Shown: in pieces, positions 4,331-57,519 of the stretch
Layout of the letters: the number at the start of each line of letters is the position of its first letter
How positions within the stretch are numbered: the first letter of the stretch is position 1
From: Octopus sinensis
Taxonomy: Eukaryota
Length of the DNA: 64,000 bases
Assembly: GCF_006345805.1 (NCBI RefSeq)
Contig: NW_021836134.1
Coordinates: 335,440 to 399,439 of the forward strand
Direction: 5' to 3'
Notes under the pieces: generated by a model
The model's database searches: none
Told to the model about the DNA's origin: nothing
Seen by the model: only the letters and a program-made list of their open reading frames with translations
Translations under genes and position numbers: made by a program

Positions 4331-4355
4331 TGCCAATTTGAAGTTGGTGTGCACA

Positions 4356-4415: not shown

Positions 4416-4489
4416 CCATACCATTTTATTATTAAGATTTGTTGCTAAGTTATCCAAACTTTGTTTACCTAAAATTTAGAAAAACTTTT

Positions 4490-8199: not shown

Positions 8200-8580
8200 A
8201 CTTATTTTTTCAGAAATCAGCTACAACTAATTCTTTTTTCGCGAAGTCGATCAAAAATGCCGTCCCGAATCCTCTATAAGAGAGAAAGAACCACGTCAAT
8301 CTTGGAGGAGATTCTAGAGGCCAGATTGAATATGTTTTGTCACATCCTCCGGATAGATATGAATGCCCGCACAAACTCAGCGCCATGTAGGATCACTTTT
8401 CTTTGGACGCAATACATTTCAGAGGCTGATCAAAGACAACAGTGTCGTCTGTCCTTCACGAGGACTTCAAAAATTGAGAAGCGCCTTAAGGATAAGAGTT
8501 ACGCAATCTGGCTCAGAATATAACAAAACATAGAAAGGTGACTTCACATGCCTATTGTGCTTCACGTGCTTTGTCATGAT
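8200..8580 (+). mobile_element. RTE-like LINE C-terminal fragment (also ~21430-21800)
   Basis: ILEARLNMFCHILR and FRG*SKTT resemble RTE-type RWRLFGHILR...RGRPKTT. Confidence 0.55.
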
Positions 8581-8734
8581 AGTTTGTTGTTGTTTTTGTT
8601 GCTGACATCGCGTAGTGCTATTAAGAATATGCATTCAGCTCAAAAGGAATTGAAAAAACTTATTTAGTGAGCATGATTTACATAAATAATTTCAATATGT
8701 TTCAATTATAATTTTTTGAGAAATTTATTAATGA

Positions 8735-9005
8735 CCAAAGGACCAGGGTAAACCTGTTAATTATAATTCCCATGATCCTCGATGCACTTCGCAAGAGACG
8801 GAGATCCTCCGGAAAGGTTCGATCGACCTGTGAAAAAGATTTCCCTTGGGATCAGATTTCTACAAGTTCTTTTTCGGTAGGGATTAGGTGCCCTCTGAGC
8901 GTTTTCATATCCAATTGAAGTTCCAACTAACATGGTAAACCACATTACGCCACGCTGAGATCCGGCAGGTAGGAGATTCCCATTCACAGGACTCGTCGCC
9001 TCACG
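8735..9005 (-). mobile_element. SINE-like element related to 7717-7862 (also ~21950-22220)
   Basis: Minus strand shares GAACCTTTC.G.AGGATCTCC and GGGAAT..TATAATTAAC.GG..TTTGGTC.TTAA.TAAAT with 7717-7862. Confidence 0.6.
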
Positions 9006-9720
9006 TTAATTCTACATAAACTGTCGTTTATTTCCTCTTCATACATTTAACAATTGTATGATAGATAAGCATTACATGCTTTAAAATCAATAATTTCAAT
9101 CTGACTGTGATGAACGGGTGTACCAATTTTATCAGGATTATGAAGTTTCTCAATTTTTAAAAAATTTCTATTAAGTTACTTGAACAAGCTGGCTTTTTCG
9201 ACAACTCTCGGTCGCTGTGCTCAACGAAAATACGCACCCCGGCGTCGTTAAGCTGACTCTTAGGCTCTCGATTATTCTCTTAGCTACTTACCTAGCTAGC
9301 ATCTAATTTTGTTTTTGATTTTATGATTTATCCCAAAAAGAAATTATTTGAAATAATCTAATAGTCAATCATTATACAATTTTAATACAATTGATAATTA
9401 ATTTTCCGACCATTATTCTAAGAGTTATTAATGATTTAATTGGCAATTTGTTAATCTACATTTTGTTAATGATAAAATAGATTAAATAAAAACCAATTTT
9501 TGTAATAAAAAACTACATTTGCTGACTCATAAACGTATTTTTCAAATGAACTAAATATCTGTAGAAATTTTTTTTCTTAAATAAAAATACATTAAATAGA
9601 AAAATGATAATGGTCAAATTTTTTTCATCATTAATTAATCATTTGTGGGTAATATTAAAAAAATTAAATATTAAATTATGGTTAGAAAAATCGAGATAAT
9701 CAAATTAGAATTAAATTAGA

Positions 9721-10135
9721 TTAAGTTGATATTTTTTGGAGAATGATCTGATAAATATCAATTCCTCGCAAAAACGTATCAACATTTAGATACTCATCAT
9801 GGTCATGAGGAAGCACAGGAGTGTTATTCATCGGGGAAAAGTTGAGAACTGGAATTCCAGTCTATGTATTGTTAGATTTAATAATGTACTCCACGAAGAT
9901 ATCTTGCATCAGTTCCTGCCGGAAAAATCATGACCTGTGTTTCCAGTTCACTAAAGTTTTTTATCAAAAATTTAAAATTAAAATATAATTTAACTCAATT
10001 ATTGATTAAAACTCACAGTTCATCAATAGCAGAAAAAAACGATTTACAAAACGGGGAATCAAGGGACGAAGGTTGAATTTGTTCACTATCCTGTCAAATA
10101 TTACAAAAATTCAAATAAAACATAAATTTTATTGA
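9721..10135 (-). pseudogene. ACY1: Duplicated 3' exons of aminoacylase-1, lacking the 5' part
   Basis: Near-identical to 22934-23348: [30 protein letters not shown]...RGIDIY. Confidence 0.85.
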
Positions 10136-14256: not shown

Positions 14257-15413
14257 GGGTGGCTGACCTCCCGTGGGAGCGCCACCTTTTTCGGTAAAGG
14301 GGGTCTGCCTGCTTTCCGTTTGCCACCGGTTTCAGCCGGCTCTGGAGGCGTCCCATCGTCCTCCAGCCGGGCTTCAGGGCTTGGCAGCTGAACTCCAGAT
14401 TTTGCTACTGCAGTTTTCTTCACTGCTCTCGCCTTCGGGGCGGCGGGTTTTGTTTCTGGGCATGGGTCCGTTTGAATTCCCGTGTTAATGAAGCAGGTCT
14501 GACTTCCGGATTCGATCAAGTTCTTGACGATAACGTCAGTTTGAACACCAATATCGCATTTCGGATTAAGTAACTTCTTCGACCAAGACATTTGTATGCC
14601 AGACATTTGTATTGCATTTACACGATTTCTCTTAGTGGGAGTCACTTCCAGTTTCTTCTTTGTCGATTGTTTCGCCACCGGACAGCCCAACCAGTTCGCC
14701 CGGTGTCCATGTGATCCGCAGTTGATGCACGGGAGTTTGACGTGTGTTCCGATCGTACATTGGGTGCGATCGTGTGCATCACCACACAACAAACAGCGCA
14801 CTGTCTCTTTACAGTATAACGAGATGTGTCCAAATTTGTAACATCGATAGCATTGCCTCTCGGGATTTTTGTACCAGGTAAAACGGATTTGGTTGAAGCC
14901 AATTTTAAGACCTAGGGTGATCAACGACTGTGCTTCGTTTCTGTCCTGGATAGTAAGCTTGCCAAGTGGCAGATTTTTCCCATTTTTACTAAATCTTTCC
15001 AGTTTGAACCCTGGGGATAGCACTTTCGACAAAAGCCTGTGTAGATCCTCGTTATCAACCCAAAAAGGTAGATTCCTCATCATTAAGGTCGAATCCCTGG
15101 GTGTTCGGTGCTCTATTGTGTGCCCATTGTCACCAAAAGGAAGCTTCATTTCCCAATCGTTTTTAAAAGACTCGAAATCCCGTTCCGAATTAAAGACAAG
15201 TTCGTATGAGCCATCAAAGCGACGGGAGATTCTCGCCTTGAGGGCAGTTTTCGAATTACAGATGATGTTGGCAACCTCAATTGAATCAAAAGAGGTGTTT
15301 GACACACGTACAATTATCGACACTTTCCGATTTTCTTTTTCTTGTTTGAAATTAACATTAATTTTGCTATTTTCAATTTTGCTATTTGCACAACCAGAAA
15401 CGAAACGCACCAT
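14232..15413 (-). CDS. LINE ORF1 gag-like protein with three CCHC knuckles, copy B
   Basis: 393 aa, three zinc knuckles, directly upstream of ORF2. Confidence 0.93.
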   Translation of the reverse strand: MVRFVSGCANSKIENSKINVNFKQEKENRKVSIIVRVSNTSFDSIEVANIICNSKTALKARISRRFDGSYELVFNSERDFESFKNDWEMKLPFGDNGHTIEHRTPRDSTLMMRNLPFWVDNEDLHRLLSKVLSPGFKLERFSKNGKNLPLGKLTIQDRNEAQSLITLGLKIGFNQIRFTWYKNPERQCYRCYKFGHISLYCKETVRCLLCGDAHDRTQCTIGTHVKLPCINCGSHGHRANWLGCPVAKQSTKKKLEVTPTKRNRVNAIQMSGIQMSWSKKLLNPKCDIGVQTDVIVKNLIESGSQTCFINTGIQTDPCPETKPAAPKARAVKKTAVAKSGVQLPSPEARLEDDGTPPEPAETGGKRKAGRPPLPKKVALPREVSHPCRKDSLL

Positions 15414-15415
15414 GC

Positions 15416-17870
15416 TTTCCTTTTTTTATTTTTCGATTTTTTGTTTTTTATTTTCTTTTTTTGTCTTTTGCGGTGTTTTATTTTATTTTTGATTTTTTAA
15501 CTTTTTTTTGATTTTTTTCTTATTTTTTGTTTTTTTATTGTGTTTTTATTTTTTAATTTTTTTTATTTTTTGATTTTTTAACTTTTTTTTGAATTTTTTC
15601 TTATTTTTGTTTTTTATTGTGTTTTTATTTTCTTTTTTTATTTTTTTAATTTTTTTTTCCTTTTTCATTTATTTTTTAAATTTTTTTTTTATTTTTGAAT
15701 TTTTTTTTGTTTTTATTTTTTATTTTTTGTTTTTTTTATTTTTTGTTTTTTATTGTGTTTTTATTTTTTTATTCTTTTTTTTGTGTTTTATTTTCTTTTT
15801 TTGATTTTTTTGTTTTATTTTCTTTTTTTATTTTTTAGTTTTTTAATTTTTTGATTTTTATTGTGTTTTTATTTTATTTTTTTATTTTTTAAAAGTTTTT
15901 TTATTTTTTAATTTTTTTTTATTGTTAATTTTTTTTTATTTTTAAATTTTTTTTTATTTTTAATTTTTTTTCTTTTTTTGTCTTTTAGTTTCTTTTTTTT
16001 ATTTATTAAGTTTTTTTTTCTTTTTTGTTTATTTTCTTTTTTAATTTTTTAAGTTTTTTTTTTTTTTTTTTTATTTTCTTTTTTTTGGGCTTTATTTTCT
16101 TTTTTTTATTTGTTAACTTTTTATATTTGATTTTTTCGTGTTTCTTTGTAATTTCCTTTTTTTTCTTTTTTTATTTGGGTGAGATGGGGGGAAATGCGGA
16201 AATGCGGCAGGCAGAGATGCGGCAGGCGGAAATGCGGCAGGCAGAGATGCGGCAGGCAGAGATGCGGCAGGCAGAGATGCGGCAGGCAGAGATGCGGCAG
16301 GCAGAGATGCGGCAGGTAGAGATGCGGCAGGCAAGAAAGCGACAGGCAAGAAAGCGACAGGCAAGAAAGCGACAGGCAAGAAAGCGACAGGCAAGAAAGC
16401 GACAGGCAAGAAAGCGACAGGCAAGAAAGCGACAGGCAAGAAAGCGACAGGCAAGAAAGCGACAGGCAAGAAAGCGACACATAAAAAAGCGACAGGCAAG
16501 AAAGCGACAGGCAAGAAAGCGACACACAAAAAAGCGACAGGCAAGAAAGCGACACACAAAAAAGATTTGATTAATTACCTTATTAAGCTGACCGTTTTTT
16601 CTTCAGCTTCGTTTTTCCTCCTTCGGTTATCTATTAAAAAAATTATTTTTGAATAATAAAAAAGTTTAGGATAAGAGGCATACCGAAAATAAATTCTATC
16701 TTTACGAAAAACTTCTTTTCTTAAGGTCGTCTTCCCTCCTTCGGTTATCTATTGAAAAAATTATTTTTGAATAATAAAAAAGTTTAGGAAAAGAGGCATA
16801 CCGAAAATAAATTCTATCTTTACGAAAAACTTAACTAAATAGTTAATATTTTTACGCAAATTCTTCTGATTGCGCTGTCAATGGGTGGTAAATTGTGTTA
16901 ATGATTGTCCTAATGTGGTTTCAACTATCAAAGTGTTTTTCAAAATCTGTTAATTGCACACTCTATTCAAGGTCGTGCGTCAATTTGTGGTAAATTGTGT
17001 TAATGATTGTGCTAATTGGTTTCAACTATCAAAGTGGTTTTTCAAAATCTGTTAATTGCACACTCTATGATAATAGCTTTAATTTTGATTCATGGTCGTT
17101 AATGATATATGCATTTAATTTTAAAGAGAAAAACATAGGATGAATTGAATTTCTTTATCGCGAATAATTGGGAGTTCATCATTGTTAATATTCTCGCTGT
17201 CGTTTTCATCAAGGATATTCTTAATACGTGAGATTTTTGCCTGGAAAGTTTTAATGGACCTCATCATGAATGTCGAGGACATCGTAGTTATTCATTTTAA
17301 CCAAAATGCAGAAAATTTTTTTTTAATTTTTTTGGGGGGGAAGGTTTTAAGGACCTCATCATGTAAGTCGAGGACATCGTAGTTGTTCATTTTAACCAAA
17401 ATGCAGAAAATTTTTTTTTGATTTTTTTGGGGGGAAGGTTTTAAGGACCTCATCATGTAAGTCGAGGACATCGTAGTTATTCATTTTAACCAAAATGCAG
17501 AAAATTTTTTTTTAATTTTTTTGGGGGGAAGGTTTTAAGGACCTCATCATGTAAGTCGAGGACATCGTAGTTGTTCATTTTAACCAAAATGCAGAAAATT
17601 TTTTTTTTAATTTTTTTTGAGGGGGGAAGGTTTTAAGGACCTCATCATGTAAGTCGAGGACATCGTAGTTGTTCATTTTGACCAAAACGCAGAAAAATTT
17701 TTTTTAATTTTTTTTGGGGGGAAGGTTTTAAGGACCTCATCATGTAAGTCGAGGACATCGTATTGCCAATTTGAAGTTGGTGTGCACACACAGACAGACA
17801 GACAGACAGACAGACACACAGACAGACAGACAGACAGACAGACACACACCATACCATTTTATTATTAAGA
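15416..17870 (-). mobile_element. Helitron-like element, 5' portion, copy B (T tract, 15-bp array ~16195-16563, 93-bp array ~17255-17765)
   Basis: A|TC 5' end at 17870; same modules as 2004-4437; 15-bp array one unit longer. Confidence 0.68.
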
Positions 17871-20800
17871 TTTGTTGCTAAGTTATCCAAACTTTGTTTT
17901 ACCTAAAATTTAGAAAAACTTTTTTTAACATAGTAATAACATAATAAACTAACCACGTGATCCCGATTCACTTCACAAAGGACCTCATCTTTCACGGTAA
18001 TCTTCCCACTAGTCACAAAAAATCGGAACGAATGAATGGTTGGTTGCAAGGACATAGCCCGGCAATCTGAAGTTCAGCTTAATCAGATTTTCCAAACGAG
18101 CCGCCCCGGAACCTTTGTTTCCATTTGACCAATGTTTGGCTTATTTGCACGCCCTTAATTGAGCCTTCTCGGTTTTCCTCCTGTTTGATAAATAAGGTTC
18201 CCGTAAACCACAAGCATAGGAAAAACATGGTTTGATGTATTGAAGATATATGTTTGTGAAGACCGGGTGAGAACTACTCTTCCATAATCCCAATAAGGTT
18301 TCAACAAGTTCATTTATTTTTCGCATTTCATAAGTATTTTATCTAAATTTTGAGAAAAGCAGAAATCTATATCATTACTCACTTGTAAAATCCTCTGCAT
18401 TTTTCACTGTTTTCTTATTGTCTCCTGAATCTTAGGCATAATCTCAAGATTTTAAAAAATGTAAATCATTAGCTGAATGAGCGAGAACTCTTTTTTTCAT
18501 TCAAAAGTCGGAGCGAAGATCCAATAAATGCAAAAATTGGTAATAAAAAATCACCTTAGTTAAGTTAGTTAATTAATCCACTTTCGCGCTACCAATAGAT
18601 CGTCAGCGTCCGTCAATCAACCCCTGATGACAGCATAATCCTCCGAAAGTGTCTTGGGAAGACATCCTCCTGGACGTCCTCTATAAGTTGGATATTCAAA
18701 AAATCACTTTTGAGGACATTATTTTCTTAACATTTATTTCAAAAATGTAAATAAAAATTCAAAAAATTCAATTTTAAAATTTCATTATAAAAAGTTTATT
18801 TACAACAAAAAACAAAATAAGAATTTAAATCAAGAAAATTTGGTGTGTATCTTCTGCTTGTTTCAACAAATTTAGATACAGCATTAATTTATACGTCAAT
18901 TTCGTAGGTTATCAATTAAAAAAAGTACTGAGATTTTAAACATTTTAACTAAATGAGTTCAAAATTTCGAAAAATTATTTATGAGCTGATAACGGTATGT
19001 TTGAAGTTTTACAAAATATCAAATCAACAAATAATATTCCTTGTGTTCCTTAATATCTTCAAAGTTTTATGCTACTATAAAATCAGAAATGAAATCAGTG
19101 TACGATTTAACAAAAACTGGATTAAGCATGGATTGCTGAATCAAAAAAAGTTCAGATGATTGTTGAAGGAGAAACGAGTTAGTACAAACTTGCGGGAAAT
19201 GCTATGTCAAAAACATTGAGGATGTTGGCAGTAGCTATCGCTGAAATTAACTCTGCTTTAAAGGAGATCCAAATGGCATTCGAAATTGTCTAAGCTCAAG
19301 GTTTATCAGGACTTTTCCGTTTTTACATTTTTCGACGGGTTCTTCGGACAGGATTAGGAAACAATTTCTTCCGATTCTGTTTCAGTAAAAACCACATTTT
19401 TAGAGGTCTCTCTTTTTGGATTCCATTCGTTTTGTTGTAGATTAGTTCAATAGTTGAGTGGTTTGTTTCTTTGACTATTCAGGAGGTTTTTAGAAAAAAG
19501 TTAAGATTTAGAATCAATAATGTGCAAAGAGAATAAATTGACTGTTTTTAGGAAAATGGCAATTGAAATTCTTTGTAGGAATCATGATGATTCACTTTGC
19601 TCACATTTACGCGAAGAAATCCTACTTCTGAGGTCATAGATAAAATTTCCTGCATCTCCAAAGACTTCAACTAAGACGGGAGCAAAAAATGATGATATGA
19701 GAGAGTTTGATATTTGTCGATTTTCACACGCTCCCTGCGTGCGCAAGGAATTCGGCCGAAGAGATAATTTTCAACACAAAAAACTTGCCTTTGTAGATCG
19801 CATCCCACACAAGTGACATACCTTTTTAGAATAGGAAGATTGTCTTTTGTCATCACCTTAATGATAACTATAAACTATTCTTCATTATTTATTATTACTG
19901 GAGAATTCGTAGTTGTGAAGTTTAATATCGAATGAATTTTCTCTTCAATACGAAGAAAAAAAAATTGACTGAGGACCTAATCATTTATAGAGTTTTAGTA
20001 ATTTGTCTTTAAGAAACTAAGCTCAACAAGGATTTCGATGAGATTATCTTAGTTCAATATTTTATTTATTTGGGTTAACATTACTCAATTTAGCTATCAT
20101 TAATTGATGTTTCTTCATATAAGACAACTAGTCCGCTTACCGATCACGTCTCGACACCTCTCCTAATATTATTATAGTAAGAAAGAAAGCTGACTCCTCT
20201 GGCAGGTCAACTGACAGTCAAAATTACTCTTTCCTAAGGATAAGATTATTTTCTTTTGCAATTTGTTGTTGTCAACCTTAATGCAATGCATGTGATAGCG
20301 ATCATGCTCGCCAACGTTTCTTGATTGTCACTAATTGGATGTATCCATTAGTCCAGATATTTATAATTAATTTTTTATGTAGAACTAGAACTTGGTCACT
20401 ATTCTATCCTATGTAAATACGACAAGGACTATTGTGACTGTGCCAAATTGTCCAGCAAGTAGATTATACTTGTAAAATTTATCTACTTCGACTTGCTTTA
20501 AGTTGTCTTTAAATGTAAACACGACTTCAAATATTGTTATCTAATTTTGTATTTTATGAAACACATTGGCTTGTTTTCAAGGCCATGTCTACTTTCGTGT
20601 CAACAGGACTATTTGCCACGATCACTAACCTACCTAAATAATACATATAAATCTCATGTTTTTTTAAATGAAGGAATTTCCAGTCCTGATTAATGCGATT
20701 CTTAAATGGGAAGACGACCACATTGCATCAAAAAGCTTGCATGATGGAAATGATGGCATCATATCGAACTAATGGGATGTCTATTTTTTTAATAACTACT

Positions 20801-22933
20801 GATATAATATCAATAATATAAAATTCAGGTATAAAAATTTATTCTAATATAACATGTTATCCGGCATCGGTAAGTAAGAGTCATCCTTATATCAGAATCA
20901 TGACTGACTTAAGAATCATCATCTGCCATAAAATCAATTTAACAAATAGACGTCAATTGTATATAACTTTAGCTAGACTATTTAATTTAGATTCTCAGTC
21001 CCGATTATTGGAAATATCTTTCCTTCTCTTAAATAATTACAATAAAATAGCAACACAAGCGGGATAACTTTACTAACGTTATTTTGCGGTGTGCTTATTA
21101 ATAATAAATAACAGAACAAATAATTAAGCACGTTAAAAAATAGACAAATGTATTATTTAATCAAATTTTAAAAATATTACTAAACACGTTTAAAAAAAAT
21201 TATATAATTTAACTTTAAATAGGAAACACAGAAACTAGACAGTCATTTCTTGGATCCTAAACTGGAATGTATAAAAGATGCACCTCCCTAGCAACAGGAG
21301 AGAGACTCCTATTCAGAAACTAGGGTAGTGTTGAGATCCTAACACCAGTGATGTTGGCAAGCTTTGTGAAATATTAGCTAAAACGAACTTGTACAAAACA
21401 GAAGTACAAAATTCTAAACTTATTTTTTTCAGAGATCAGCTACAACTAATTCTTTTTTCGCGAAGTCGATCAAAAATGCCGTCCCGAATCCTCTATAAGA
21501 GAGAAAGAACCACGTCAATCTTGGAGGAGATTCTAGAGGCCAAATTGAATATGTTTTGTCACATCCTCCGGATAGATATGAATGCCCGCACAAACTCAGC
21601 GCCATGTAGGATCACTTTTCTTTGGACGCAATACATTTCAGAGGCTGATCAAAGACAACAGTGTCGTCTGTCCTTCACGAGGACTTCAAAAATTGAGAAG
21701 CGCCTTAAGGATAAGAGTTACGCAATCTGGCTCAGAATATAACAAAACATAGAAAGGTGACTTCACATGCCTATTGTGCTTCACGTGCTTTGTCATTATA
21801 GTTTGTTGTTGTTTTTTGCTGACATCGCGTAGTGCTATTAAGAATATGCATTCAGCTCAAAAGGAATTGAAAAAACTTATTTAGTGAGCATGATTTACAT
21901 AAATAATTTCAATATGTTTCAATTATAATTTTTTGAGAAATTTATTAATGACCAAAGGACCAGGGTAAACCTGTTAATTATAATTCCCATGATCCTCGAT
22001 GCACTTCGCAAGAGACGGAGATCCTTCGGAAAGGTTCGATCGACCTGTGAAAAAGATTTCCCTTGGGATCAGATTTCTACAAGTTCTTTTTCGGTAGGGA
22101 TTAGGTGCCCTCTGAGCGTTTTCATATCCAATTGAAGTTCCAACTAACATGGTAAACCACATTACGCCACGCTGAGATCCGGCAGGTAGGAGATTCCCAT
22201 TCACAGGACTCGTCGCCTCACGTTAATTCTACATAAACTGTCGTTTATTTCCTCTTCATACATTTAACAATGGTATGATAGATAAGCATTATATACTTTA
22301 AAATCAATAATTTCAATCTGACTGTGATAAACGGGTGTACCAATTTTATCAGAATTATGAAGTTTCTTAATTTTTAAATGATTTCTATTAAGTTACTTGA
22401 ACAAGCTGGCTTTTTTTACAACTCTCGGTCGCTGTGCTCAACGGAAATACGCACCCCGGGGTTGTTAAGCTGACTCTTAGGCTCTCGATTATTCTCTTAG
22501 CTACTTACCTAGCTAGCATCTAATTTTGTTTTTGATTTTATGATTTATCCCAAAAAGAAATTATTTGAAATAATCTAATAGTCAATCATTTATACAATTT
22601 TAATACAATTGATAATTAATTTTCCGACCATTATTCTAAGAGTTATTAATAATTCAATTGGCAATTTGTTAATCTACATTTTGTTAATGATAAAATAGAT
22701 TAAATAAAAACCAATTTTTTCAATAAAAAACTATATTTGCTGACTCATAGACGTATTTTTCAAATGAACTAAATATCTGTAGAAATTTTTTTTCTTAAAT
22801 AAAAATACATTAAATAGAAAAATGATAATGGTCAAATTCTTTTCATCATTAATTAATCATTTGTGGGTAATATTAAAAAAATTAAATGTTAAATTATCGT
22901 TAGAAAAATCGAGATAATCAAATTAGAATTAGA

Positions 22934-24499
22934 TTAAGTTGATATTTTTTGGAGAATGATCTGATAAATATCAATTCCTCGCAAAAATGTATCAACATTT
23001 AGATACTCATCATGGTCATGAGGAAGCACAGGGGTGTTATTCATCGGGGAAAAGTTGAGAACTGGAATTCCAGCCTATGTATTGTTAGATTTAATAATGT
23101 ACTCCACGAAGATATCTTGCATCAGTTCCTGCCGGAAAAATCATGACCTGTGTTTCCAGTTCACTAAAGTTTTTTATCAAAAATTTAAAATTAAAATATA
23201 ATTTAACTCAATTATTGATTAAAACTCACAGTTCATCAATAGCAGAAAAAAACGATTTACAAAACGGGGAATCAAGGGACGAAGGTTGAATTTGTTCACT
23301 ATTCTGTCAAATATTACAAAAATTCAAATAAAACATAAATTTTATTGATAAAAATCCCATTTTTTTCAGCTTCAGGAAAAACCTGATCACAAATTTCAGT
23401 AAAACTTGTGGTTGAAGGTAAGCGTAAATCAAATGCTTTTAAATAGCTTAAATAAGAAAAAAACTGGCAGAAAGAGTGGCCGGGATAACGTTTGTCTGTA
23501 CGCCGCCTTCAAGAACGGTTAAATTGACAGTTGTTACATCTCCCAGTTTCATCCCGGGATTTCTAAAATTAACAGTTTCATAACAACTCTTCAAGTTTTC
23601 GTCTTTCATTATTGCGGAAAGATTGTACTGCAGCGAGACAGTTTGCCTATAATTTAAAACGTAAAATTTATTACCATCTTCTCTCCTGCAGTGTTCTCCA
23701 AAAAAAGTGACCCATGGCCTGGGTTTCCATGACACGTCAATTTGAATGCTATAAATCATTCAAGTCAAAAAAATCAAACGCATTACAGTCCTTTCGCCAT
23801 AAAAAACTGAAAACGTTGCATTTGGGGATGCAATTCCTACAACTCTTAGTGACATAATAAACACCTTCATCAAGGGCAAAACCAATGTTGAGAGATTTAA
23901 AATACTCACTCTTCACAAACGTCGCCATTCCGGTCAGTCCACCGATTTCCTCATCTGATAACAATAAAATAAATATTATAAACCTGGTACTACGCTGACG
24001 TATATAGTTCGGCGCGGAACATAACCTTCTTTGATGAGTTTTCTGATCGCTTCTAAATATCTGACGTCAGTAAATTAAAAAATACTGAATTGTGACACAT
24101 TTCATATCCTAACCACAATTATAATATATTTAAACCTGACTTCCACGTGCATAGATGTTCCCATTATTGTCCATTTCTGCACCAAATGGATCAAATGTCC
24201 ACTTCTCCTTAAAATATTTGAATTTACACATAAATACTCTGTACACTGGAACAACGTCCATGTGAGAATTCAGTAAAATTGATTCCGCTTCAGGGTCGTT
24301 CCCTTGCCACTTTATTACAAGAATCAGCTTTGTTGGATAAAATTCCAAAACGGTAGGCTGAAGCCCTATTCCAAGGGCTAAATCAGAGAGAAATTTAACC
24401 GCAGGACCTAAAAATGCTTTTATTTAATAGAATGTCACCATAATCAGGATCTGGTTGGACTGTTGGAAATCGCAGATATTCACGGAATGCGTCGACCAT
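22934..24499 (-). CDS. ACY1: Aminoacylase-1 (peptidase M20A), ~13 introns
   Basis: Spliced reading: [88 protein letters not shown]; GT-AG introns of 25-31 nt plus one of 66 nt. Confidence 0.93.
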
Positions 24500-28569: not shown

Positions 28570-29067
28570 TTATTTATAAAACCAATTAAATTTTTTAATA
28601 ATGTCATAACAAAATATCGCGACAAAAAAATCATAGTCAACGTAGTGCCTATGAAAAGTTTTTCTTCGATCCAATTCCTTAAATGAGTTCAGGATCCTCG
28701 ATTTTATAACCAAATTAGGTCGATTCGAAGATTTCAGAAATATAGATTTCTTCCCATTTTCCACTGCAAGGAAAGTAATAAGGAGAAGAAATAATGCCAC
28801 TGTATTCTTCTGCTGCAGAGAAGATGCAAGTACTGTAGACTTTGGCAGGGCATTGAGACTTAATTGTTGAATTAAGTAGTCGTTTTTTAATGATAATTCA
28901 CGATTAGATTCTTCCAGTCTTGCATTTTCTTCTTTTAGCGTTTGAATACGGAATTTGACGGTGTCAATATATTGTTCAAGAGTCAATTTAGCATTCATTC
29001 TATTTCTAATTTTTCGAATTTTCGAATTTTTAAGTGACAAATTTCGTTTACTTCTTAGGTTCAACAT
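28570..29067 (-). CDS. bZIP-like factor with C-terminal hydrophobic segment (CREB3/ATF6-like)
   Basis: KIRKIRNR basic region, Leu heptads (LKEENARLEESNRELSLKNDYL), then TVALFLLLITFLAV. Confidence 0.5.
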   Translation of the reverse strand: MLNLRSKRNLSLKNSKIRKIRNRMNAKLTLEQYIDTVKFRIQTLKEENARLEESNRELSLKNDYLIQQLSLNALPKSTVLASSLQQKNTVALFLLLITFLAVENGKKSIFLKSSNRPNLVIKSRILNSFKELDRRKTFHRHYVDYDFFVAIFCYDIIKKFNWFYK

Positions 29068-29435
29068 GGTAACGCACAGTAACACATCATATTGTACGTA
29101 GACATTTTATTATATTAGGTTGACCGTTGATTAATATAAAAATAATATAATTATAGTATAATTAAATTATAGTAAAATTACTAAATTTAATTCTGAACTG
29201 TTATTATTTCTACACTATAGAATATTGAAATAGAATATTTTAAATCTTTTTTCTGAAATTTAAATTCTATTAGTTAAAAATAATGTTAACTAAATTGTCA
29301 TAAATTAAATAATACTAATTCATATAAAATTACAAATTTAAAATTCCTGTTGGTGTGTGGATGGATAAGTTTGATCATCCAAATGTTAAATAATCACAAA
29401 TTATATTTAATTTATAGTATACAGATAGACTGAAT

Positions 29436-33720: not shown

Positions 33721-34289
33721 GATTTCAAATTTCAAAAATACAATCTGCTGGCAAACAAACTGTCGATCCTCTATGAAGCAAAAGTAAAGATTATTCCAAT
33801 TATTTTGACACGGGAGTTGTCTCAAATTTTTGTGAAAGTCATACGAATAAGTTATCCATTGAAGAAAGAACGAGGACATACATCCAGTAAATTGTGATGA
33901 AGAAATGTAAAATGAAAAAAGTTCGTGCCAAACTGACAATCTCGTAGAAGAGAAATTACTGCCAATCTGGATTCTTATTAGATACTTTAAAATAGAACTG
34001 TCATTTTATATTCATCAAAGTTTACTTGATCATTCTAAAAGCAGAAAGAGTAGTAATTCAAATAATAAAATAAAACGTACCAAGTCAATCCTTATTTTGT
34101 TAAATAATCCCTAGTCTGTAGCTAATCAACAAATTTAAAATCAAAAAAAAATTTTCAAAACCTTTCCTATTCAAAATTCGTAGAATACCCAGAAAGTTCT
34201 GAATATAAATATTTCAACTATTTTTCATATAAACAAAACTTTTCCTCTACAAACTAAGCCGTTTTACAATTTGTGATTAAATTATCTCA

Positions 34290-35045
34290 TAAAGTCAAAA
34301 ATAGTGTAAAATTATTTAATGATTCAAACTCCTCGACTCCCTTTCTTTCATAGCACTTACACTTAAGAATGCTTTCAGTTCCTAAACTACCGGATTTCCA
34401 CCTCACCTGAGAACAGGTTTTTAATTCACTCAATAACTGACACTCTTCAACAACAACACCGGCCAAAAGACTCTGAATTGTCTCGATCTTTTCCAACATA
34501 TCAGCCTGTGGATGCATCCCAGATTCCTCCCATTCTTCAACTTGGGCCATCAGTTCAACCATTCGTTCAAACTTTGATAAGAAAAAAATAAAAACCCTCG
34601 ACTTTTTAGTTTTTGAAGTCAATCCAGCCTTCATTGATGAAATGACTGAATTGGGAAACATTTCAGTATTCCCCCACGTGGTTAGCAATTCTTGGAGGGT
34701 TTGAGACACCTCCTCACTACGATTATAAAAATAAAGTCACTCATTTGAAATAAAAACATTGCAAAGACTTTTTTGGAATGTTTCGGAAAAATCTCGGCCT
34801 CGTTTCTTGCCATTTTGCAGTAAACGGTCACACAGATGTAAGAGATTGATTTTTTTATTTGGATTGGCTAAAAGTTGAGATGGTGGAATTAAACCTTTGT
34901 TGTATTGCTCGTTCCATATTTGTGCGATTTCCTGTTTATTTTTGTGATTTAAAACCACCCATTGGCTTATTTTTAGGATGCTATCTTCTGATTCAGTCAA
35001 CGTTTCGAGTAAATTTTCAAATGCACCACGTGAATAATCAAACAT
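34290..35045 (-). CDS. CID-domain protein, RPRD1/Rtt103-like; 3' end uncertain
   Basis: FENLLETLTESEDSILKISQW, NKKINLLHLCDRLLQNGKKRGRDF, LQELLTTW; short GT-AG introns. Confidence 0.78.
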
Positions 35046-37716: not shown

Positions 37717-39240
37717 CAGTGGTTCACAACCTTTATTTTTGTATTATTAGAAATATTTTTTATTAAAAAAATAAGATTTTTAATGAGATCCTCGCGGTTG
37801 ATGAAATTGACAAGTTTTTCAAAATTTATACTTCTTTTCGTAAGTGTAATTCTAATGTCTTCTCTTTTTCTATGTTAGTTTGTTTCTTTTTTCCGATCAT
37901 ACTATTCAGAGTGCTGAATCCTTGCTCTACGCAGTATGATGTAGGAAAAATAAAATTACTGGCATCATTTTTTTCATAATTTCGGGAATTTCATTTTTGT
38001 AGATTTTTCTGTCCAGAATTGACTCTAGTTTTCGTTTTAAATTTTATTTTGAGTTTTGGTCGGTCGTTTTTTAGTTCTATTAACTCTTGTTGACATTCAT
38101 CGTCAGAATCATAATGAATGGCACCCAAGGATTAATCATCAATCAGAAAAGTTTAAATTAATTAAATCTTCAAATCTTTTTTTCAAATCTTGTTCCAAAG
38201 ATTCGAAATGAAATTCAAATTTTCAAATCGTTGTCATCAAAAGTGTGGTCATAAAAATCGAATTTTCCAAATTTCTATTACTCAATTAAATTTTCTAAAA
38301 AACACGATATTTTCCAACCATAGCCATCAGTTGCGCACGATAAAATATGTTCCAAGGAATATTATTTAAGAATAAGATTGAAAACATTTTGAATATGACA
38401 ATCCTTGGTATCCGTGATTAAAGATTCTAACTCTTCTTGCAGAATAAAATCATCATCAAAATATCTGTATAAAAAGTATTTATAAAAAGTAATACCTTAC
38501 ATATGCCATAAAATTGACTGGTTATCAACGATAACTGATTCGTCAAATTGGACTGAAAACTTGCGTTCCCTGAGAAGTAAAATTAAGGATTGTTCAATTT
38601 CATTAGAAATTTCATCAATTCTTTTTCGTGGGGTGTCGTTGCTTAATGGAATAGTCTTCATAATATTTGAAGAATCGTTTTGTAAGATATCGTTTATAAA
38701 TAAATTTAAACAAGGACGGATAACATTTTCTGCAATCGAATGAGCAGTACTTATAATTTAATAATAATGAAACCATTTTTGTAATTATCTCTGCAACTTA
38801 TATGAAAAAGATAATCCAGAGACATTTTGAGATATATTTTTATTAAAGATTGACTGTAAGGTGTTTTTATTTTCAAAATTCTTTTTAATTCTAGAAAAAA
38901 GTCTTCCTTTTTTCCAATGAATTATGATATTTTCGCTTTAAATGTTCAATCAAACGAGACGATTTCTTTGCTTAATTCAAAAAGATTGCACCCCATTGAG
39001 GCAAAGTGGTTTATTAGGATCTTGAGGATCTTTAATAAAGCCAAGAGAGAAATATATTCATCTTTATACATTCTGACTTTTTTGAGCACGACCCATAAAG
39101 ATAACTAGAAATCACGCTTAGAAATTTAAATAAATTATAAAAAAAATATCATATTTATTCATTATTTCAATTATCGCCCCCATGGTGAAATAAATCGGAT
39201 CATCCCTAAGGGGAGAATCGTCCACCGTTGAGAACCACTG
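37717..39240 (-). mobile_element. Degenerate hAT (Buster) transposon
   Basis: TIR CAGTGGTTC(A/T)CAAC; 8-bp TSD ATTTAGAT; internal ESLEQDLKKRFEDL-like remnant. Confidence 0.88.
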
Positions 39241-41564: not shown

Positions 41565-41703
41565 GTACTTACCTGGTCGTGCATGTTTTTATCAATTAGG
41601 CAATGTGCATTCGCTGGCCATCCATTGCACTTTGGGTCGCTTCGAGTGTGGTCGGTTCCATACGGGCTGTCCTACGGCGTATTTTTTCGTGTACTTCGGT
41701 ACA
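41565..41703 (+). ncRNA. U1: U1 snRNA, compact (~139 nt)
   Basis: ACTTACCTGG 5' end; helix H GTCGT/ACGGC; SL1 loop TATCAATTAG; SL2 loop ATTGCAC; SL3; Sm site ATTTTTTCG; SL4 TGTAC-TTCG-GTACA. Confidence 0.9.
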
Positions 41704-41789
41704 TTTTTATTTATAAATTTGAAAATTTTTTTTTAAAAATCAATGAACCACAAAAAACAAAGTAAATAACTACAAGTTAATTAATAAAA

Positions 41790-42330
41790 GCTTAATGGGC
41801 GGGATGCCGACGCGATCGAGAAGAATTAGAGCGTACTATCGCGAGGGATATCCGCTCGAAAAACCATTTGATTCGCGGGCGTCGCCTGTGATAGCAGACA
41901 TGCGGGACCCGATCTCCTGAACACCAATTATCTCACAATCGTCGTCCATAAAAGTACCGAATGAACTGTATGGAAATGCGTGGAGCCATGCACCCTTCCC
42001 GTGTTGTGGCCCAGAAAGCAAACAGACAAAACAGTGTTGGTTCAACCCCCGCTTTAGGTCATCAACAATAGCTTTGCACAATATTGCGTCCCAACAATTC
42101 TGTCTCGAGACATCATCCTGGATCGAAAGTTCAGCTTCCTTCTACTGCAAGCAAGCCTCGTCAAATACTGTGTCCAAGGATAGTAGTGTGAGTTTGGACT
42201 TTCTGGACGAGATGACTGCAGCTTAAAAGCGATAAGATATGCCGGAAGTGCGAATCCAGCGCCGACCTGATACCCGTGCCTCCGTGTGTAGTGTAGAAAG
42301 CTTGTAAAAATTTTTTGTCGGAGCCACAAA
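41790..42330 (-). mobile_element. CRE-clade non-LTR fragment with internal deletions
   Basis: HGKGAWLHAFP..FGT.MDD; EIGSRMSAITGDARES..F.RISLAIVR. Confidence 0.7.
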
Positions 42331-42499
42331 GAAACTCTTAATTATTGATTTAATTCTTGAAGGTTGAGAATTTCTTTTCTAATCTATAAAAATTCATCAA
42401 AGTTTGCATGAAGATTATTCAGAACATTACTTACTTTATTACAGAAGCAAACAAACTCATTCCAAATCAGTATTCTGTTTTTTTAACAGTAAGGAGAAT

Positions 42500-45398: not shown

Positions 45399-47068
45399 TG
45401 TGACATGGTTTGCGCGATACATAGGGCCGCGCGATACCTGACGTGACCTTGAAATGTGCAATTATGACATTGATGGGATTAAATTATAAATCTTTTAATT
45501 AGACCGCGACTCATTCTTATCATTTAATAATTTACTAAATTAGCTAAAGACTCTCTCATTTTGACAAAAAATTATATTTGTAAGAATTTAATTATCAGAA
45601 ATTAATTTTTTTGGTGGGAAACCTAAATTTCTTGAGTTATTCTAGCGTGCAAGTATGTTTTGCAGCAATGTCCTCGTACAAAGGTTATGTAAAGAATAGT
45701 TTGGAATATCAAATTTTAAAAGATGTTTTACAGGATAAATTTCCTGAACATCTTACAAAGCAAAAAAAATATAGACTAGTTAAGAAAATTGAAAATTTTA
45801 CTGTAATTAATGAAAGGTATCATACAAATTGTAAATGTATAGATTGTATCTTAAATGTGCGAATTCAGATCACAAGCTAGTGATTTGTCTGGACAATGAA
45901 CCCGAAATGGAGATCGTTGCTAAAAGTTTGCATGACTTCTTGCATGGAGGAGTTAACAAAATTGAATATGAATGTCGACAACGATATTTCACAGTTAAAA
46001 ATGAGATTATTCGAAAAGTCATTCGAAACTGTGAAATTTGTAAATTTGCGCGACCCTTAAAAGTTTTAACTTTTTTAAATCCTAGATTGGAGATATAAAT
46101 AACCATGTCTTTGCATCTTGCCCAAATGAAAGATTTCAGATATATCTTATAGATCTGAAAAGTTTTTCTACTATAAATAAAAATTTTAAATGGATTTTAA
46201 CGGTCATTGACGTATATAGCAGGTTAGTTTTTTAACAATTTTTATAGATTTGCATTTGCGAGGCCGCTCTACACTAAGTCCTCAAATGAAGTTTGTGAAA
46301 ACCTTATTTTTCTTAAATGGTCCGTGTCAATTTCTTCAGTCCGATAATGGGACTGAATTCAAGAATCGTGAAATGACCAATCTATGTGAGGAATTCAATA
46401 TCAAACGAATTCACGGAAGGCCAAACAATCCCCGCTCACAAGGGATTGTCGAACGCTTCAACCAGTCAATTACAAAAAAATGGCAAAAATGATCGACAAT
46501 GATAATAAAAAGTGGCTGGAAAAATTAGAAAATGCAGTGTACAGTTATAACATTTCTGTCCACTCATCTTCTAATGAGAGCCTTTTGAAAGATACCGGGG
46601 AATAAGTGGAATAAATACAATATTTTATGGTTGTAATTATAAAATTATTCCTTAGATAATTCAAGTAATGATTTGTTGAGTCCTGATCAAGTCGATGATG
46701 CAAACAATTGTCCGAGTCTAATTGAAAATTCATGTAATTTGAATTTCTATATGTAGATGATTGTAATTATTCGTTTACAAGTCCGAAAAGATTGCGACTG
46801 AATAAGTTTGAATCTCCATATTATCCATCTGCAGAAATTATCAGTATTTTATCAAACAATCGCGTTGAGGTAGTTTAAACATTCAAATTTAGTAGATAAA
46901 AAATTCGATGAGCGAAATTTCGATTGTGCCAATGTCCAGACTTAAAAAATAATTAACAAGTTATTATTCTTTGAAGTTTAATATTAATTACAATATTGAC
47001 ATTAAGTTAAGCTGCAAGGTCACGTCAGGTATCGCGCGGCCCATAGGTATCACGCAAACCATGTCACA
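45399..47068 (+). mobile_element. Ginger (Ginger2/TDD-like) DNA transposon
   Basis: ~50-bp TIRs with TGT...ACA ends, 5-bp TSD TAATA, integrase with HHCC and DDE core. Confidence 0.88.
45668..46600 (+). pseudogene. Ginger integrase-like transposase with three micro-introns, probably inactive
   Basis: LHDFLHGG..CEIC; ERFQIYLID; IDVYSRFAFARPL; QSDNGTEF; SQGIVERFN; introns 45817-45842, 46063-46085, 46223-46247; apparent frameshift in A-run near 46475. Confidence 0.8.
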
Positions 47069-52248: not shown

Positions 52249-54193
52249 TCTTAATATAAAATGGTATGGTGTGTGTCTGTCTGTCTGTGTGTCTGTCTGT
52301 CTGTGTGTGCACACCAACTTCAAATTGGCAATACGATGTCCTCGACTTACATGATGAGGTCCTTAAAACTTCTCCCCAAAAAAAATTAAAAAAAAATTTT
52401 CTGCATTTTGGTTAAAATGAACAACTACAATGTCCTCGACTTACATGATGAAGTCCTTAAAACCTTCTCCCAAAAAAAATTAAAAAAAATTTTCTGCATT
52501 TGGTTAAAATGAACAACTACAATGTCCTCGACTTACATGATGAAGTCCTTAAAACCTTCCCCCAAAAAAAATTAAAAAAAAAATTTTCTGCATTTTGGTT
52601 AAAATGAACAACTACAATGTCCTCGACTTACATGATGAAGTCCTTAAACCTTCCCCCCCAAAAAAATTAAAAAAAATTTTCTGCATTTTGGTTAAAATGA
52701 ACAACTACAATGTCCTCGACTTACATGATGAAGTCCTTAAAACCTTCCCCCAAAAAAAATTAAAAAAAAATTTTCTGCATTTTGGTTAAAATGAACAACT
52801 ACAATGTCCTCGACTTACATGATGAAGTCCTTAAAACCTTCCCCCCCAAAAAAATTAAAAAAAAATTTCTGCATTTTGGTTAAAATGAACAACTACAATG
52901 TCCTCAACTTACATGATGAAGTCCTTAAAACCTTCCCCCCAAAAAAAATTAAAAAAAAATTTTCTGCATTTTGGTTAAAATGAACAACTACAATGTCCTC
53001 GACTTACATGATGAAGTCCTTAAAACCTTTCCCCCAAAAAATCAAAAAATTATTTTCTGCATTTTGATTAAAATGAACAACGCGAATGTCCTCGACATTC
53101 ATGATGAGGTCCATTAAAACCTTCAAGGCAATAATCTCACGTATTAAGAATATCCTTGATGAAAACGACAGCGAGAAATTAACAATGATGAACTCCCAAT
53201 TATTCGCGATAAAGAAATTCAATTCATCCTATGTTTTCTCTTTAAAATTAAATGCATATATCATTATCGACCATGAATCAAAATTAAAGCTATTATCATA
53301 TTTGACTTTGACAGAATGTGCAATCACAGATTGCACGACTTTGAATAGAGTGTGCAAGTAACAGATTTAGAAAAACCACTTTGATAGTTGAAACCACATT
53401 AGCACAATCATTAACACAATTTACCACCAATTGACGCACGACCTTGAATAGAGTGTGCAATTAACAGATTTTGAAAAACACTTTGATAGTTGAAACCACA
53501 TTAGCACAACCATTAACACAATTTACCACCAATTGACAGCGCAATCAGAAGAATTTGCGTAAAAATATTAACTATTTACTTGAGTTTTTCGTAAAGATAG
53601 AATTTATTTTCGGTATGCCTCTTTTCCTAAACTTTTTTATTATTCAAAAATAATTTTTTAAATAGATAACCGAAGGAGGAAAAACGAAGCTGAAGAAAAA
53701 ACGGTCAGCTTAATAAGGTAATTAATTAAATCTTTTTTGTGTGTCGCTTTCTTGCCTGCCGCATTTCCGCCTGCCGTATCTCCCCCTGCCCCATTTCCGC
53801 CAGTAAAAAATAAAAAAAGAAAAAAGGAAATTACAAAGGAAAAATGAAAAAATTAAATATAAAAAAAATAAACCACAAAAAATGAAAAAAAAGTTTGCAA
53901 TGACAATAAACAAGGCCCAGGGACAGTCATTAAAGGTAGTTGGGTTATTTTAGAGAGTGAGTGCTTTTCACATGGACAGCTGTATGTGGGATGCTCGAGG
54001 GTAGGCAGAAGAGAAAATTTATTCATATATGCCAAGGAAGGACGGACGACAAACATCGTTTATCAACAGGCGATAGAATAGGGTTACATTAAACCAGGTA
54101 GTTTTATACATCTACATAAACTTATAGTTGTTTGATGAAACAGGCCCTCCGCAGGAGCTAGGTCGCGGTGAGCGAAGCGAGCTGCCGAGCTAG
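52249..54193 (+). mobile_element. Non-autonomous Helitron-like element, copy C, no LINE
   Basis: 5' TCTTAATATAAAATGG + (GTCT)n; 3' CTCC-GCA-GGAG and GCGAAGC hairpins then CTAG|T; base before TC is G rather than canonical A. Confidence 0.72.
52330..53110 (-). repeat. ~93-bp tandem repeat, 8 units plus one diverged unit
   Basis: Reverse complement of the 3826-4330 array. Confidence 0.95.
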
Positions 54194-56559: not shown

Positions 56560-57519
56560 GAATTTAAGATTGTTCTAACTCCCTCCCCGAAGGGAAATTG
56601 TCTGAAGTTTACTCTGCAGCCCGTGGTCGGTGGGAGGCTCGGTTGGTTCGAAGCTGCCCAACTCTCAATCTGTACAGCGCCAATGGGACGAAATCTCTTG
56701 TCAGGCAATCTTCGAAGGCCTGCTTCCTGTCTCCAATCAACACCGTGTCGCTTGCCTCCGTGCAGGTCGCTGTGAAAGCAGCGGTGTCTGGTTAAAGGCT
56801 CTCCCTCTCCCTTCCATCGGGAACCTGTTGGACAAGGAATGCCTAAGAATTGCAATCTCCCTCCGTGTCGGGCTGAAAATCTGCCAGTCGCACAAATGCC
56901 GTTGTGGGGGAACTGTTGACGAGTACGGTTTGCGATTCGGTTTGCCGGTGTGTCGTGCCCCCGTCACAGTGAACTCAACTCAGTCGTACAGAGAGCCCTC
57001 GCCTCAGCAGGCATCCCGTCTATCCTTGAACCTGTTGGATTGGATAGAGGGGATGGCAAACGCCCCTGACGGCATGTCCACCTTCCCCTACGAGCAGGGG
57101 AAATCCCTTATTTGGGATTCTACCTGCTCGGACACGTTCTCGCTGGAAATCTCGCGCTGTCCGCCGCCAATCCTGGGCACGCTTCCAGGCAGGCCGAGGA
57201 GCGAAAGATTCTCAAGTACGGCCACCTGTCCAACTCGCTGCTCTTTACTCCAATTGCCTTGGAGTCCTCCGGGATCTTCGGTCCCAAGACACTCCGCTTC
57301 CTTCGCTCGCTCGGTCGACGGATTTCAAGGACTAGTCACGATCCAAGAGAGTTTTCTTGGCTCCTGAACGTCTGTCGATTGCTGTGATCCGAGGGAACGT
57401 CTTCGCCATTCGCGCGGCTGGTCGGGTGTCTCGTGAGGCCTTTAACTAACTTAGCTATCTGTATTTTTGTCTTGTTTGTATAAATTAAATTTATTAGCTA
57501 AAAAAAAAAAAAAAAAAAA
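56560..57519 (+). mobile_element. 5'-truncated CRE-clade non-LTR element
   Basis: SGVWLKALP..IGNLLD, CRCG, PDG..FPYEQGKSLIWD, PIALES; poly(A) from 57500; 11-bp TSD AAATTGCAAAT (56549-56559, 57520-57530). Confidence 0.88.

What the first reader, a model, noticed from the sequence alone, without database searches (positions are those of the whole stretch)
41565..41703. Miniaturised U1 snRNA: divergent 70K loop, U6-run Sm site, 5-bp SL4
All U1 elements fold correctly, but the RNA is ~139 nt versus 164 nt in human. The SL1 loop is UAUCAAUUAG rather than GAUCACGAAG. The Sm site is AUUUUUUCG rather than AUUUGUG. SL4 is cut to a 14-nt UUCG hairpin, while the U1A loop and 5' pairing end are conserved. 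Human SL4 contacts SF3A1 to bridge U1 and U2, so a shortened SL4 could be a co-adaptation to ~25-nt introns (inference). Together with the micro-introns, this is the best candidate for an undescribed reduced splicing system.
Basis: partly seen in the sequence, partly recalled or inferred. Interest (0 to 1): 0.72.

Follow-up and report, generated by a model that had tools for sequence, protein, structure and literature searches.

The report
Shrunken U1 splicing RNA gene
This is a real but unusually divergent gene for U1, the RNA that marks the start of introns, from an animal whose introns are only about 25-30 bases long; its last hairpin is cut to a stub, but nothing here shows that this is an adaptation to the tiny introns.

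Summary
Window 41565-41703 (+) is a full-length match to Rfam U1 (RF00003). It scores 41.7 bits, E = 4e-7 over the whole window, which is below the family cut-off of 69.5, so a standard scan misses it.

It keeps these parts:
- the 5' end ACUUACCUG
- helix H and stem-loops 1-3
- the U1A loop AUUGCAC closed by a C-G pair
- a U-rich Sm-like site

Stem-loop 4 (SL4) is a 14-nt, 5-bp cUUCGg hairpin. Of the 37 model base pairs that are present, 33 are standard pairs, and 15 of those are changed on both sides. That argues for a constrained RNA rather than a decayed copy.

The micro-introns are real. A neighbouring aminoacylase-1 gene has 13 introns, 12 of them 22-31 nt. The host is an animal, probably a dicyemid, but that is not proven.

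- The stem-loop 1 loop AUCAAUUAG is not special. Twelve environmental U1 loci with the same loop include 161-164-nt genes with a normal SL4.
- Micro-introns in such animals are already published.

The SL4-to-intron co-adaptation idea is untested. Stentor (15-16-nt introns) is reported to have ordinary snRNAs. Whether this is the main U1 locus cannot be told from one window.

The parts
41565..41703 (+). U1 snRNA gene, about 139 nt. The exact 5' and 3' ends were not determined. cmscan extends the match to 41705.
   Evidence: RF00003 full-length match, 41.7 bits, E 4e-7 for the whole window. Single copy in the window.
41565..41575 (+). Single-stranded 5' end GUACUUACCUG, which pairs with 5' splice sites. 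Identical to the consensus except that the first base is G instead of A.
41576..41579 (+). Helix H, 5' strand GUCG. It pairs with CGGC at 41675-41678.
   Evidence: cmscan alignment; constrained fold; 4 of 4 standard pairs
41580..41609 (+). Stem-loop 1, the U1-70K site. It has 8 contiguous pairs, then a U x C mismatch and a U.G pair. The loop UAUCAAUUAG is at 41590-41599.
   Evidence: The loop variant is shared with canonical-length U1 genes.
41611..41645 (+). Stem-loop 2, the U1A site. The loop AUUGCACUUU at 41624-41633 is closed by a C-G pair.
41650..41672 (+). Stem-loop 3, 8 pairs with one bulge.
41675..41678 (+). Helix H, 3' strand CGGC.
41681..41689 (+). Sm-like site AUUUUUUCG. The U-run is kept, but there is no G directly after it and no purine pair around it.
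   Evidence: Compared with the nonamer AAUUUGUGG / AAUUUUUGA in PMC4383343.
41690..41703 (+). Stem-loop 4 reduced to 5 bp (U-A, G-C, U-A, A-U, C-G) plus a UUCG tetraloop. Folding energy is -3.6 kcal/mol, against -12.6 for human SL4.
   Evidence: 5 of 10 model pairs are deleted.
22934..24499 (-). Context: an aminoacylase-1 gene with 13 GT-AG introns of 31, 30, 27, 25, 29, 28, 31, 28, 22, 29, 31, 66 and 28 nt. This shows the micro-intron setting in which this U1 works.
   Evidence: Hand splicing checked by script. The spliced protein aligns over 99% of its length at 50-54% identity to animal ACY1.

Best explanation
The locus encodes a working U1 small nuclear RNA of an animal with ultra-short introns, most likely a dicyemid.

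Shown here:
- It is a full-length homologue of U1.
- It keeps the parts that do the known jobs: the 5' end that pairs with the intron start, the four-way junction, the stem-loop 1 (SL1) loop positions that U1-70K grips, the AUUGCAC loop with C-G closure for U1A, and a uridine run for the Sm ring.

Inferred:
- It recognises 5' splice sites in the ordinary way. In this genome the sites offer only 3-7 of 11 matches to it, so proteins and intron geometry must carry much of the specificity.
- Stem-loop 4 (SL4) is a 5-bp stub without the G-C-rich stem that human SF3A1 reads. The human-type U1-U2 bridge through SL4 is therefore probably weakened, lost or made differently.
- The reduction is more likely part of the general fast, reductive evolution of this lineage than a demonstrated adaptation to short introns.
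For: - Full-length RF00003 alignment, E 4e-7 over the window.
- Of 46 model pairs, 37 are present. 33 of those are standard pairs: 10 unchanged, 8 changed on one side, 15 changed on both sides. Paired columns are only 39% identical to the consensus. This is the pattern of a structure kept under selection.
- The canonical fold lies within 1.8 kcal/mol of the minimum.
- The SL1 loop AUCAAUUAG is a natural variant seen in canonical U1 genes that score 102-149 bits. It keeps the A29/A36, U30, C31 and A32 equivalents.
- The locus is single copy and not part of a repeat. No A-rich tail follows it that would suggest a retro-copied pseudogene.
- Micro-introns are confirmed next door.
- Human SF3A1 needs the GCG/CGC pairs under the tetraloop, and A-U replacements strongly reduce binding (PMC8833184). 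Here those pairs are U-A, A-U and C-G.
- The window fits the published Dicyema japonicum genome: 33% GC here against 36.7%, LINE-rich (49% repeats published), sparse genes, and introns of 25-31 nt.
Against: - The score is below Rfam's cut-off.
- The unconstrained fold is not the U1 fold, and stability is not above shuffles.
- The Sm site departs from the nonamer at 2-3 positions.
- The loop-closing part of the SL1 stem is weak.
- There are no expression data, no recognisable promoter element and no second snRNA gene for comparison.
- The pair counts come from an alignment fitted to the model's structure, so they lean towards it.
- No related U1 of the same short type was found to test covariation independently.
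- The host is inferred, not identified.
Confidence: 0.7

Rival explanations
1. It is a minor variant or dead copy, and the main U1 of this genome is a canonical-length gene elsewhere.
For: - Only one window was seen.
- Animal genomes often carry many U1 variants and pseudogenes. Human variants are described in PMC10870369, and 34 U1 hits collapsing to about 3 genes are reported in Schistosoma (PMC2770079).
- The score is below the family cut-off.
- The Sm site is deviant, and stem-loop 4 is weak at -3.6 kcal/mol.
Against: - 33 of 37 present pairs are standard pairs despite 61% sequence change in paired columns, with 15 double changes. A neutral pseudogene would break pairs.
- All protein-binding loops and the 5' end are intact.
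- There is no poly-A tail and no repeat context.
- Keeping two very divergent U1 paralogues for a long time is less economical than one fast-evolving gene.
Confidence: 0.15
2. One reading: the short stem-loop 4 (SL4), together with the altered Sm site, is a specific co-adaptation of the U1-U2 bridge to 25-nt introns and defines a distinct reduced splicing system.
For: - The SL4 stem lacks the G-C pairs needed for human SF3A1 binding.
- 'In all species' compared by Sharma et al. the lower SL4 stem is G-C rich. Here it is not.
- In introns of 22-31 nt the U1 and U2 binding sites must lie only a few nucleotides apart.
- The 5' splice sites are degenerate, matching the reduced motifs reported for D. 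japonicum and myxobolids (PMC13644364).
Against: - There is no functional or comparative test.
- Stentor removes 15-16-nt introns with snRNAs described as similar to those of other eukaryotes (PMC9505925).
- The S. pombe SL4, with a shorter stem and bigger loop, works in human U1 chimeras.
- General reductive and fast evolution in a parasite explains the same data.
- SF3A1 of this organism was not available.
Confidence: 0.12
3. It is a chance resemblance and not an RNA gene.
For: The 9-mer alone is expected by chance in 20% of shuffles. Thermodynamic z-score is only -1.32.
Against: - E 4e-7 for a full-length, correctly ordered match of five motifs plus four helices.
- The GC content is 48%, in surroundings of about 30%.
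Confidence: 0.02

Closest known systems
Canonical metazoan U1 snRNA (Rfam RF00003; human U1, 164 nt)
   Same: The 5' end ACUUACCUG, helix H with three stem-loops in a four-way junction, a stem-loop 1 loop AUCA..AG, a stem-loop 2 loop AUUGCAC closed by C-G, a U-rich Sm site, and a 3' hairpin with a UUCG tetraloop.
   Different: - About 25 nt shorter.
- Stem-loop 4 (SL4) has 5 bp and two G-C pairs, instead of about 10 bp with a G-C-rich stem (-3.6 against -12.6 kcal/mol).
- The Sm site is AUUUUUUCG, and the spacer to SL4 is almost gone.
- It scores 41.7 bits, under the family cut-off of 69.5.
Environmental U1 genes with the same stem-loop 1 loop (loci L002/L006, L008, L010, L011, L013)
   Same: An identical loop core AUCAAUUAG, the same 5' end and the same U1A loop.
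   Different: They are 161-164 nt, score 102-149 bits, and the five printed in full (L002, L006, L008, L010, L011) keep the full GCG-UUCG-CGC SL4. They also keep G at the first loop position, where this RNA has U. They are not close relatives, because the stems differ.
Schizosaccharomyces pombe U1 stem-loop 4
   Same: A natural U1 with a shorter terminal stem. It shows that a reduced SL4 can support U1 function (a chimera is active in human cells, PMC4233244).
   Different: S. pombe has a larger loop and, according to the paper, a G-C-rich lower stem. The hairpin here is A-U rich with a UUCG loop.
Stentor coeruleus spliceosome (15-16-nt introns)
   Same: A splicing system working on introns even shorter than those here, with a conserved U1 5' end.
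   Different: Its snRNAs are described as similar to other eukaryotes (PMC9505925). No stem-loop 4 truncation is reported.
Reduced or hard-to-find U1 RNAs of reduced eukaryotes (microsporidia PMC5499648; nucleomorphs PMC6461891; Giardia PMC3510501)
   Same: These are divergent U1 genes that standard searches miss, in genomes with unusual introns.
   Different: They are protists or organelle-derived nuclei with few introns. This is an animal with many introns per gene. Only titles and abstracts were seen, so their structures were not compared.

Membership tests
U1 spliceosomal RNA (RF00003) | Single-stranded 5' end ACUUACCUG complementary to the 5' splice site consensus | tested here: met
   GUACUUACCUG at 41565-41575, aligned to model positions 1-11
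U1 spliceosomal RNA (RF00003) | Helix H plus stem-loops 1-3 forming a four-way junction | tested here: met
   cmscan alignment. Constrained fold -37.3 against a minimum of -39.1 kcal/mol. 28 of 32 present pairs in H and SL1-3 are standard pairs.
U1 spliceosomal RNA (RF00003) | Stem-loop 1 loop carrying the U1-70K recognition motif | tested here: met
   UAUCAAUUAG keeps the A29/A36, U30, C31 and A32 equivalents. The same loop core occurs in U1 genes that pass the family cut-off. Binding itself was not tested.
U1 spliceosomal RNA (RF00003) | Stem-loop 2 loop AUUGCAC closed by a C-G pair (U1A site) | tested here: met
   AUUGCACUUU at 41624-41633 with C59-G70 closure
U1 spliceosomal RNA (RF00003) | Sm site of the type Pu-A-U(3-6)-G-Pu between helix H and the 3' hairpin | tested here: inconclusive
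   AUUUUUUCG is in the right place. The U-run is present, but the following G and the flanking purines are missing.
U1 spliceosomal RNA (RF00003) | 3'-terminal stem-loop 4 | tested here: met
   Present as a 5-bp UUCG hairpin at 41690-41703. 5 of the 10 model pairs are deleted.
U1 spliceosomal RNA (RF00003) | Score at or above Rfam's gathering threshold. This is an operational criterion, not a biological one. | tested here: not met
   41.7 bits against 69.5. Nothing is reported at the gathering threshold.
U1 spliceosomal RNA (RF00003) | Expressed, trimethylguanosine-capped RNA bound by Sm, U1-70K, U1A and U1C | not testable with these tools
   No expression data. The protein genes are not in the window.
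Human-type SL4-SF3A1 bridge | G-C pairs (GCG/CGC) directly under the UUCG tetraloop, read by the SF3A1 UBL tail | tested here: not met
   The three pairs under the loop are U-A, A-U and C-G. The requirement is from PMC8833184.
Human-type SL4-SF3A1 bridge | SF3A1 with a UBL domain and a C-terminal RGGR motif | not testable with these tools

The most novel reading that the evidence does not exclude
In an animal lineage whose introns shrank to about 25-30 nt, the U1-U2 cross-intron bridge through stem-loop 4 and SF3A1 has been given up or rebuilt. U1 has been trimmed to the parts needed for 5' splice site binding and core assembly. That would be a different way of pairing splice sites in an otherwise intron-rich animal.
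Probability: 0.15. Interest if true: 0.7.

Novelty: new variant of a known kind. Interest (0 to 1): 0.4.

Why it matters
- Animals with introns under 30 nt were only recently surveyed (PMC13644364). That work examined U2 and U2AF, not U1. No description of a dicyemid or myxozoan U1 was found in the searched literature.
- This locus shows that U1 in such a genome is divergent enough to be missed by routine Rfam annotation, yet it keeps every protein-binding loop.
- It gives a concrete, cheap test of whether the SL4-SF3A1 contact is dispensable when the two ends of an intron are only about 20 nt apart.
- If it is simply a fast-evolving U1, the value is mainly for annotation.

Tried and rejected
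- Exact-product look-ups of two window ORFs found nothing on record.
- A reverse-transcriptase homology search for taxonomy gave only unnamed hits of 30% identity or less.
- The contig of the best aminoacylase exon hit (L001) has 50-70-nt introns, so it is an unrelated organism.
- A neighbour-joining tree of ACY1 did not place the host.
- Two automatic splicing scripts (greedy, and dynamic programming without a coding model) gave wrong gene models. They were replaced by homology-guided hand splicing, verified.
- Searches for relatives with the short SL4 gave nothing useful:
  - Genome contigs gave 0 hits.
  - A looser pattern gave 5 hits in bacterial genomes. About 13 are expected by chance, so they were not followed.
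  - Viral contigs gave 0 hits.
- Pol III transcription, suggested by the T5 run right after SL4, was rejected because the T6 run in the Sm site would terminate Pol III inside the RNA.
- U11 or another Sm-class RNA was rejected because U1 is the best and only significant family.
- A longer SL4 formed with downstream sequence was rejected because no complementary bases follow 41703.

Full report
**1. What is there**

The sequence at 41565-41703 (+) reads GUACUUACCUG GUCG [SL1] [SL2] [SL3] CGGC GU AUUUUUUCG UGUAC-UUCG-GUACA.

Rfam at its curated thresholds reports nothing in the 64-kb window. With E-value reporting, the U1 model RF00003 aligns over its whole length (positions 1-166) to 41565-41705 at 41.7 bits. 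E is 2.8e-9 in a 451-nt search and 4e-7 for the whole window against all families. The family cut-off is 69.5 bits.

No other snRNA and no tRNA are in the window. The locus is single copy and not part of a repeat.

**2. Anatomy**

A fold constrained to helix H with an unpaired 5' end and Sm site gives the textbook U1 shape at -37.3 kcal/mol. This is 1.8 kcal/mol above the unconstrained minimum, which is a different fold. The elements, in RNA numbering with position 1 = window 41565, are:
- Helix H: G12-G15 with C111-C114.
- SL1: 16-45, with loop U26-G35 = UAUCAAUUAG.
- SL2: 47-81, with loop AUUGCACUUU closed by C59-G70.
- SL3: 86-108.
- Sm-like site: A117-G125.
- SL4: 126-139.

I read the pairs off the cmscan alignment.
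- 37 of 46 model pairs are present, and 33 of them are standard pairs.
- Of those 33, 10 are as in the consensus, 8 are changed on one side and 15 are changed on both sides.
- Paired columns are only 39% identical to the consensus.

This pattern is expected for an RNA under structural selection and not for a decaying copy. The caveat is that the alignment was fitted to the model.

Sixteen of the roughly 25 missing positions are in SL4, where 5 of 10 pairs are deleted. The remaining hairpin has a folding energy of -3.6 kcal/mol, against -12.6 for human SL4.

**3. The individual claims**

(a) SL1 loop.
- A scan of metagenome contigs for a U1 5' end, then AUCAAUUAG, then the U1A loop found 12 loci holding four or five distinct genes.
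- The six loci that were scored are 161-164 nt and reach 102-149 bits. The five printed in full have a complete GCG-UUCG-CGC SL4.
- So this loop is a recurrent natural variant.
- In the human crystal structure, C33 and G34 are held by stacking and phosphate contacts, whereas the A29/A36 pair, U30, C31 and A32 are the specific anchors (PMC4383343). All of these anchors are kept here.
- Only G28, which flips out onto Tyr112 in human, is U in this RNA and G in the environmental genes.

(b) Sm site.
- The nonamer is AAUUUGUGG in U1 and AAUUUUUGA in U4. The first seven bases sit in the seven Sm pockets.
- Here the sequence is UAUUUUUUC(G). The uridine core is intact, but the G after it and the flanking purines are not. 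It is plausible but unproven as an Sm site.

(c) SL4.

**4. Setting**

The window is eukaryotic, uses the standard genetic code and has 33% GC. It has GC-richer LINE-type elements (endonuclease plus reverse transcriptase), integrase remnants, and a 13.4-kb tandem duplication.

An aminoacylase-1 gene at 22934-24499 (-) could be spliced by hand through 13 GT-AG introns of 31, 30, 27, 25, 29, 28, 31, 28, 22, 29, 31, 66 and 28 nt. The product aligns over 99% of its length at 50-54% identity with ACY1 from many animal phyla. The micro-introns are therefore real, and the host is an animal whose proteins are not in the searched collection.

A 2026 survey of 51 animal genomes found median introns under 30 nt only in myxobolid myxozoans and Dicyema japonicum (PMC13644364). 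The published D. japonicum genome has 36.7% GC, 49% repeats with many LINE ORF2 copies, and only 5,012 genes in 67.5 Mb (PMC6736024). That fits this LINE-rich, gene-poor window better than the myxozoans do, which are described as having relatively few transposable elements. This is an inference. A single-gene tree did not place the host.

**5. Splice sites**

In the 13 introns only GT is invariant. Watson-Crick matches to the U1 5' end over positions -3 to +8 number 3-7 of 11. This agrees with the reduced splice-site logos reported for these animals. The U1 5' end has nevertheless stayed canonical.

**6. Mechanism**

Shown: the RNA has everything known to be needed to bind a 5' splice site and the U1-70K, U1A and Sm proteins.

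Inferred: it works as the U1 of this genome.

In human, the SF3A1 UBL tail reads the three G-C pairs under the UUCG loop. Swapping them or replacing them with A-U pairs strongly reduces binding, while changing the loop matters little (PMC8833184). Here those three pairs are U-A, A-U and C-G, and the G-C-rich lower stem that Sharma et al. found in all species compared is absent. A human-type SL4-SF3A1 contact is therefore unlikely in this form.

Whether this is adaptation or drift is open.
- Stentor, with 15-16-nt introns, is reported to have snRNAs like other eukaryotes (PMC9505925).
- The shorter S. pombe SL4 supports function in human chimeras.
- Parasitic flatworms have typical snRNAs (PMC2770079). 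Lu et al. give flatworms affinities to dicyemids. The reduction is therefore probably derived in this lineage.

**7. Rivals**

- A variant or dead copy beside a canonical U1 cannot be excluded from one window. The preserved pairing and intact loops argue against a dead copy.
- Chance resemblance is excluded by the E-value.

**8. Novelty**

It is a U1, so the kind is known. The combination of features makes it a new variant rather than just another member. Those features are a 5-bp A-U-rich SL4, an Sm site without the G, and a score below the family cut-off, in an intron-rich animal with micro-introns.

I found no description of U1 from dicyemids or myxozoans in the searched library. The 2026 intron paper analysed U2 only.

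Interest is moderate. The structural deviation is real and suggests a testable hypothesis, but the functional reading rests on inference and a single locus.

Noticed in passing
window 28570-29085 (-), RNA motif at 28792-28855 (-): An ORF with a leucine-zipper-like stretch contains a match to the Hac1/Xbp1 unconventional (IRE1-cleaved) intron, RF04247. It scores 28.6 bits, E 0.0017 locally and 0.32 for the whole window, with twin hairpins carrying CUACAG and CUGCAG loops. This is probably the XBP1 orthologue. Pfam found no bZIP domain in the single-ORF translation.
   Followed up: partly
window 1-10135 and 13413-23348: A tandem segmental duplication with a period of 13,412 bp at about 97.4% identity. 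Each copy carries a LINE-type element (gag-like ORF with zinc knuckles plus endonuclease and reverse-transcriptase ORF, for example 11659-15413 on the minus strand). The copies are GC-richer (46%) than the host DNA.
   Followed up: partly
window 3641-4391, 17066-17824, 52270-53300: A satellite-like tandem repeat with a unit of about 95 bp, in three places, with 93-95% identity between copies.
   Followed up: no
window 2773-3234 and 16025-16570: Short-period tandem repeats that read as long open frames (AAGRD / ATGKK and AEMRQ / ARKRQ peptide repeats). They lie next to the LINE copies and are probably not genes.
   Followed up: no
window 38102-38185 (-): A weak match to a C/D-box snoRNA family (snoU30, 31.3 bits, E 0.11), below the cut-off.
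   Followed up: no
window 34287-35045 (-): A gene for a CID-domain protein (RPRD/Rtt103-like; Pfam CID, E 3.6e-16). The gap between its two ORFs is about 27 nt, consistent with another micro-intron.
   Followed up: partly
window 41780-42340 (-) and 56606-57364 (+): GC-rich fragments with related-looking open frames, probably remnants of transposable elements with no Pfam match. One lies only about 80 nt downstream of the U1 gene.
   Followed up: no
window 45584-46602 (+): Remnants of an LTR-retroelement integrase (Pfam rve, E 1.7e-6), broken by stops.
   Followed up: no
loci L008, L009, L011-L013 (metagenome contigs, 18-29% GC): Very AT-rich environmental eukaryote contigs that carry 161-nt U1 genes beginning UUACUUACCUG, with a shared upstream 'CCCATAA(T/A)AAAA' box about 50 nt before the gene. 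This may be a promoter element. The organisms are unknown.
   Followed up: no
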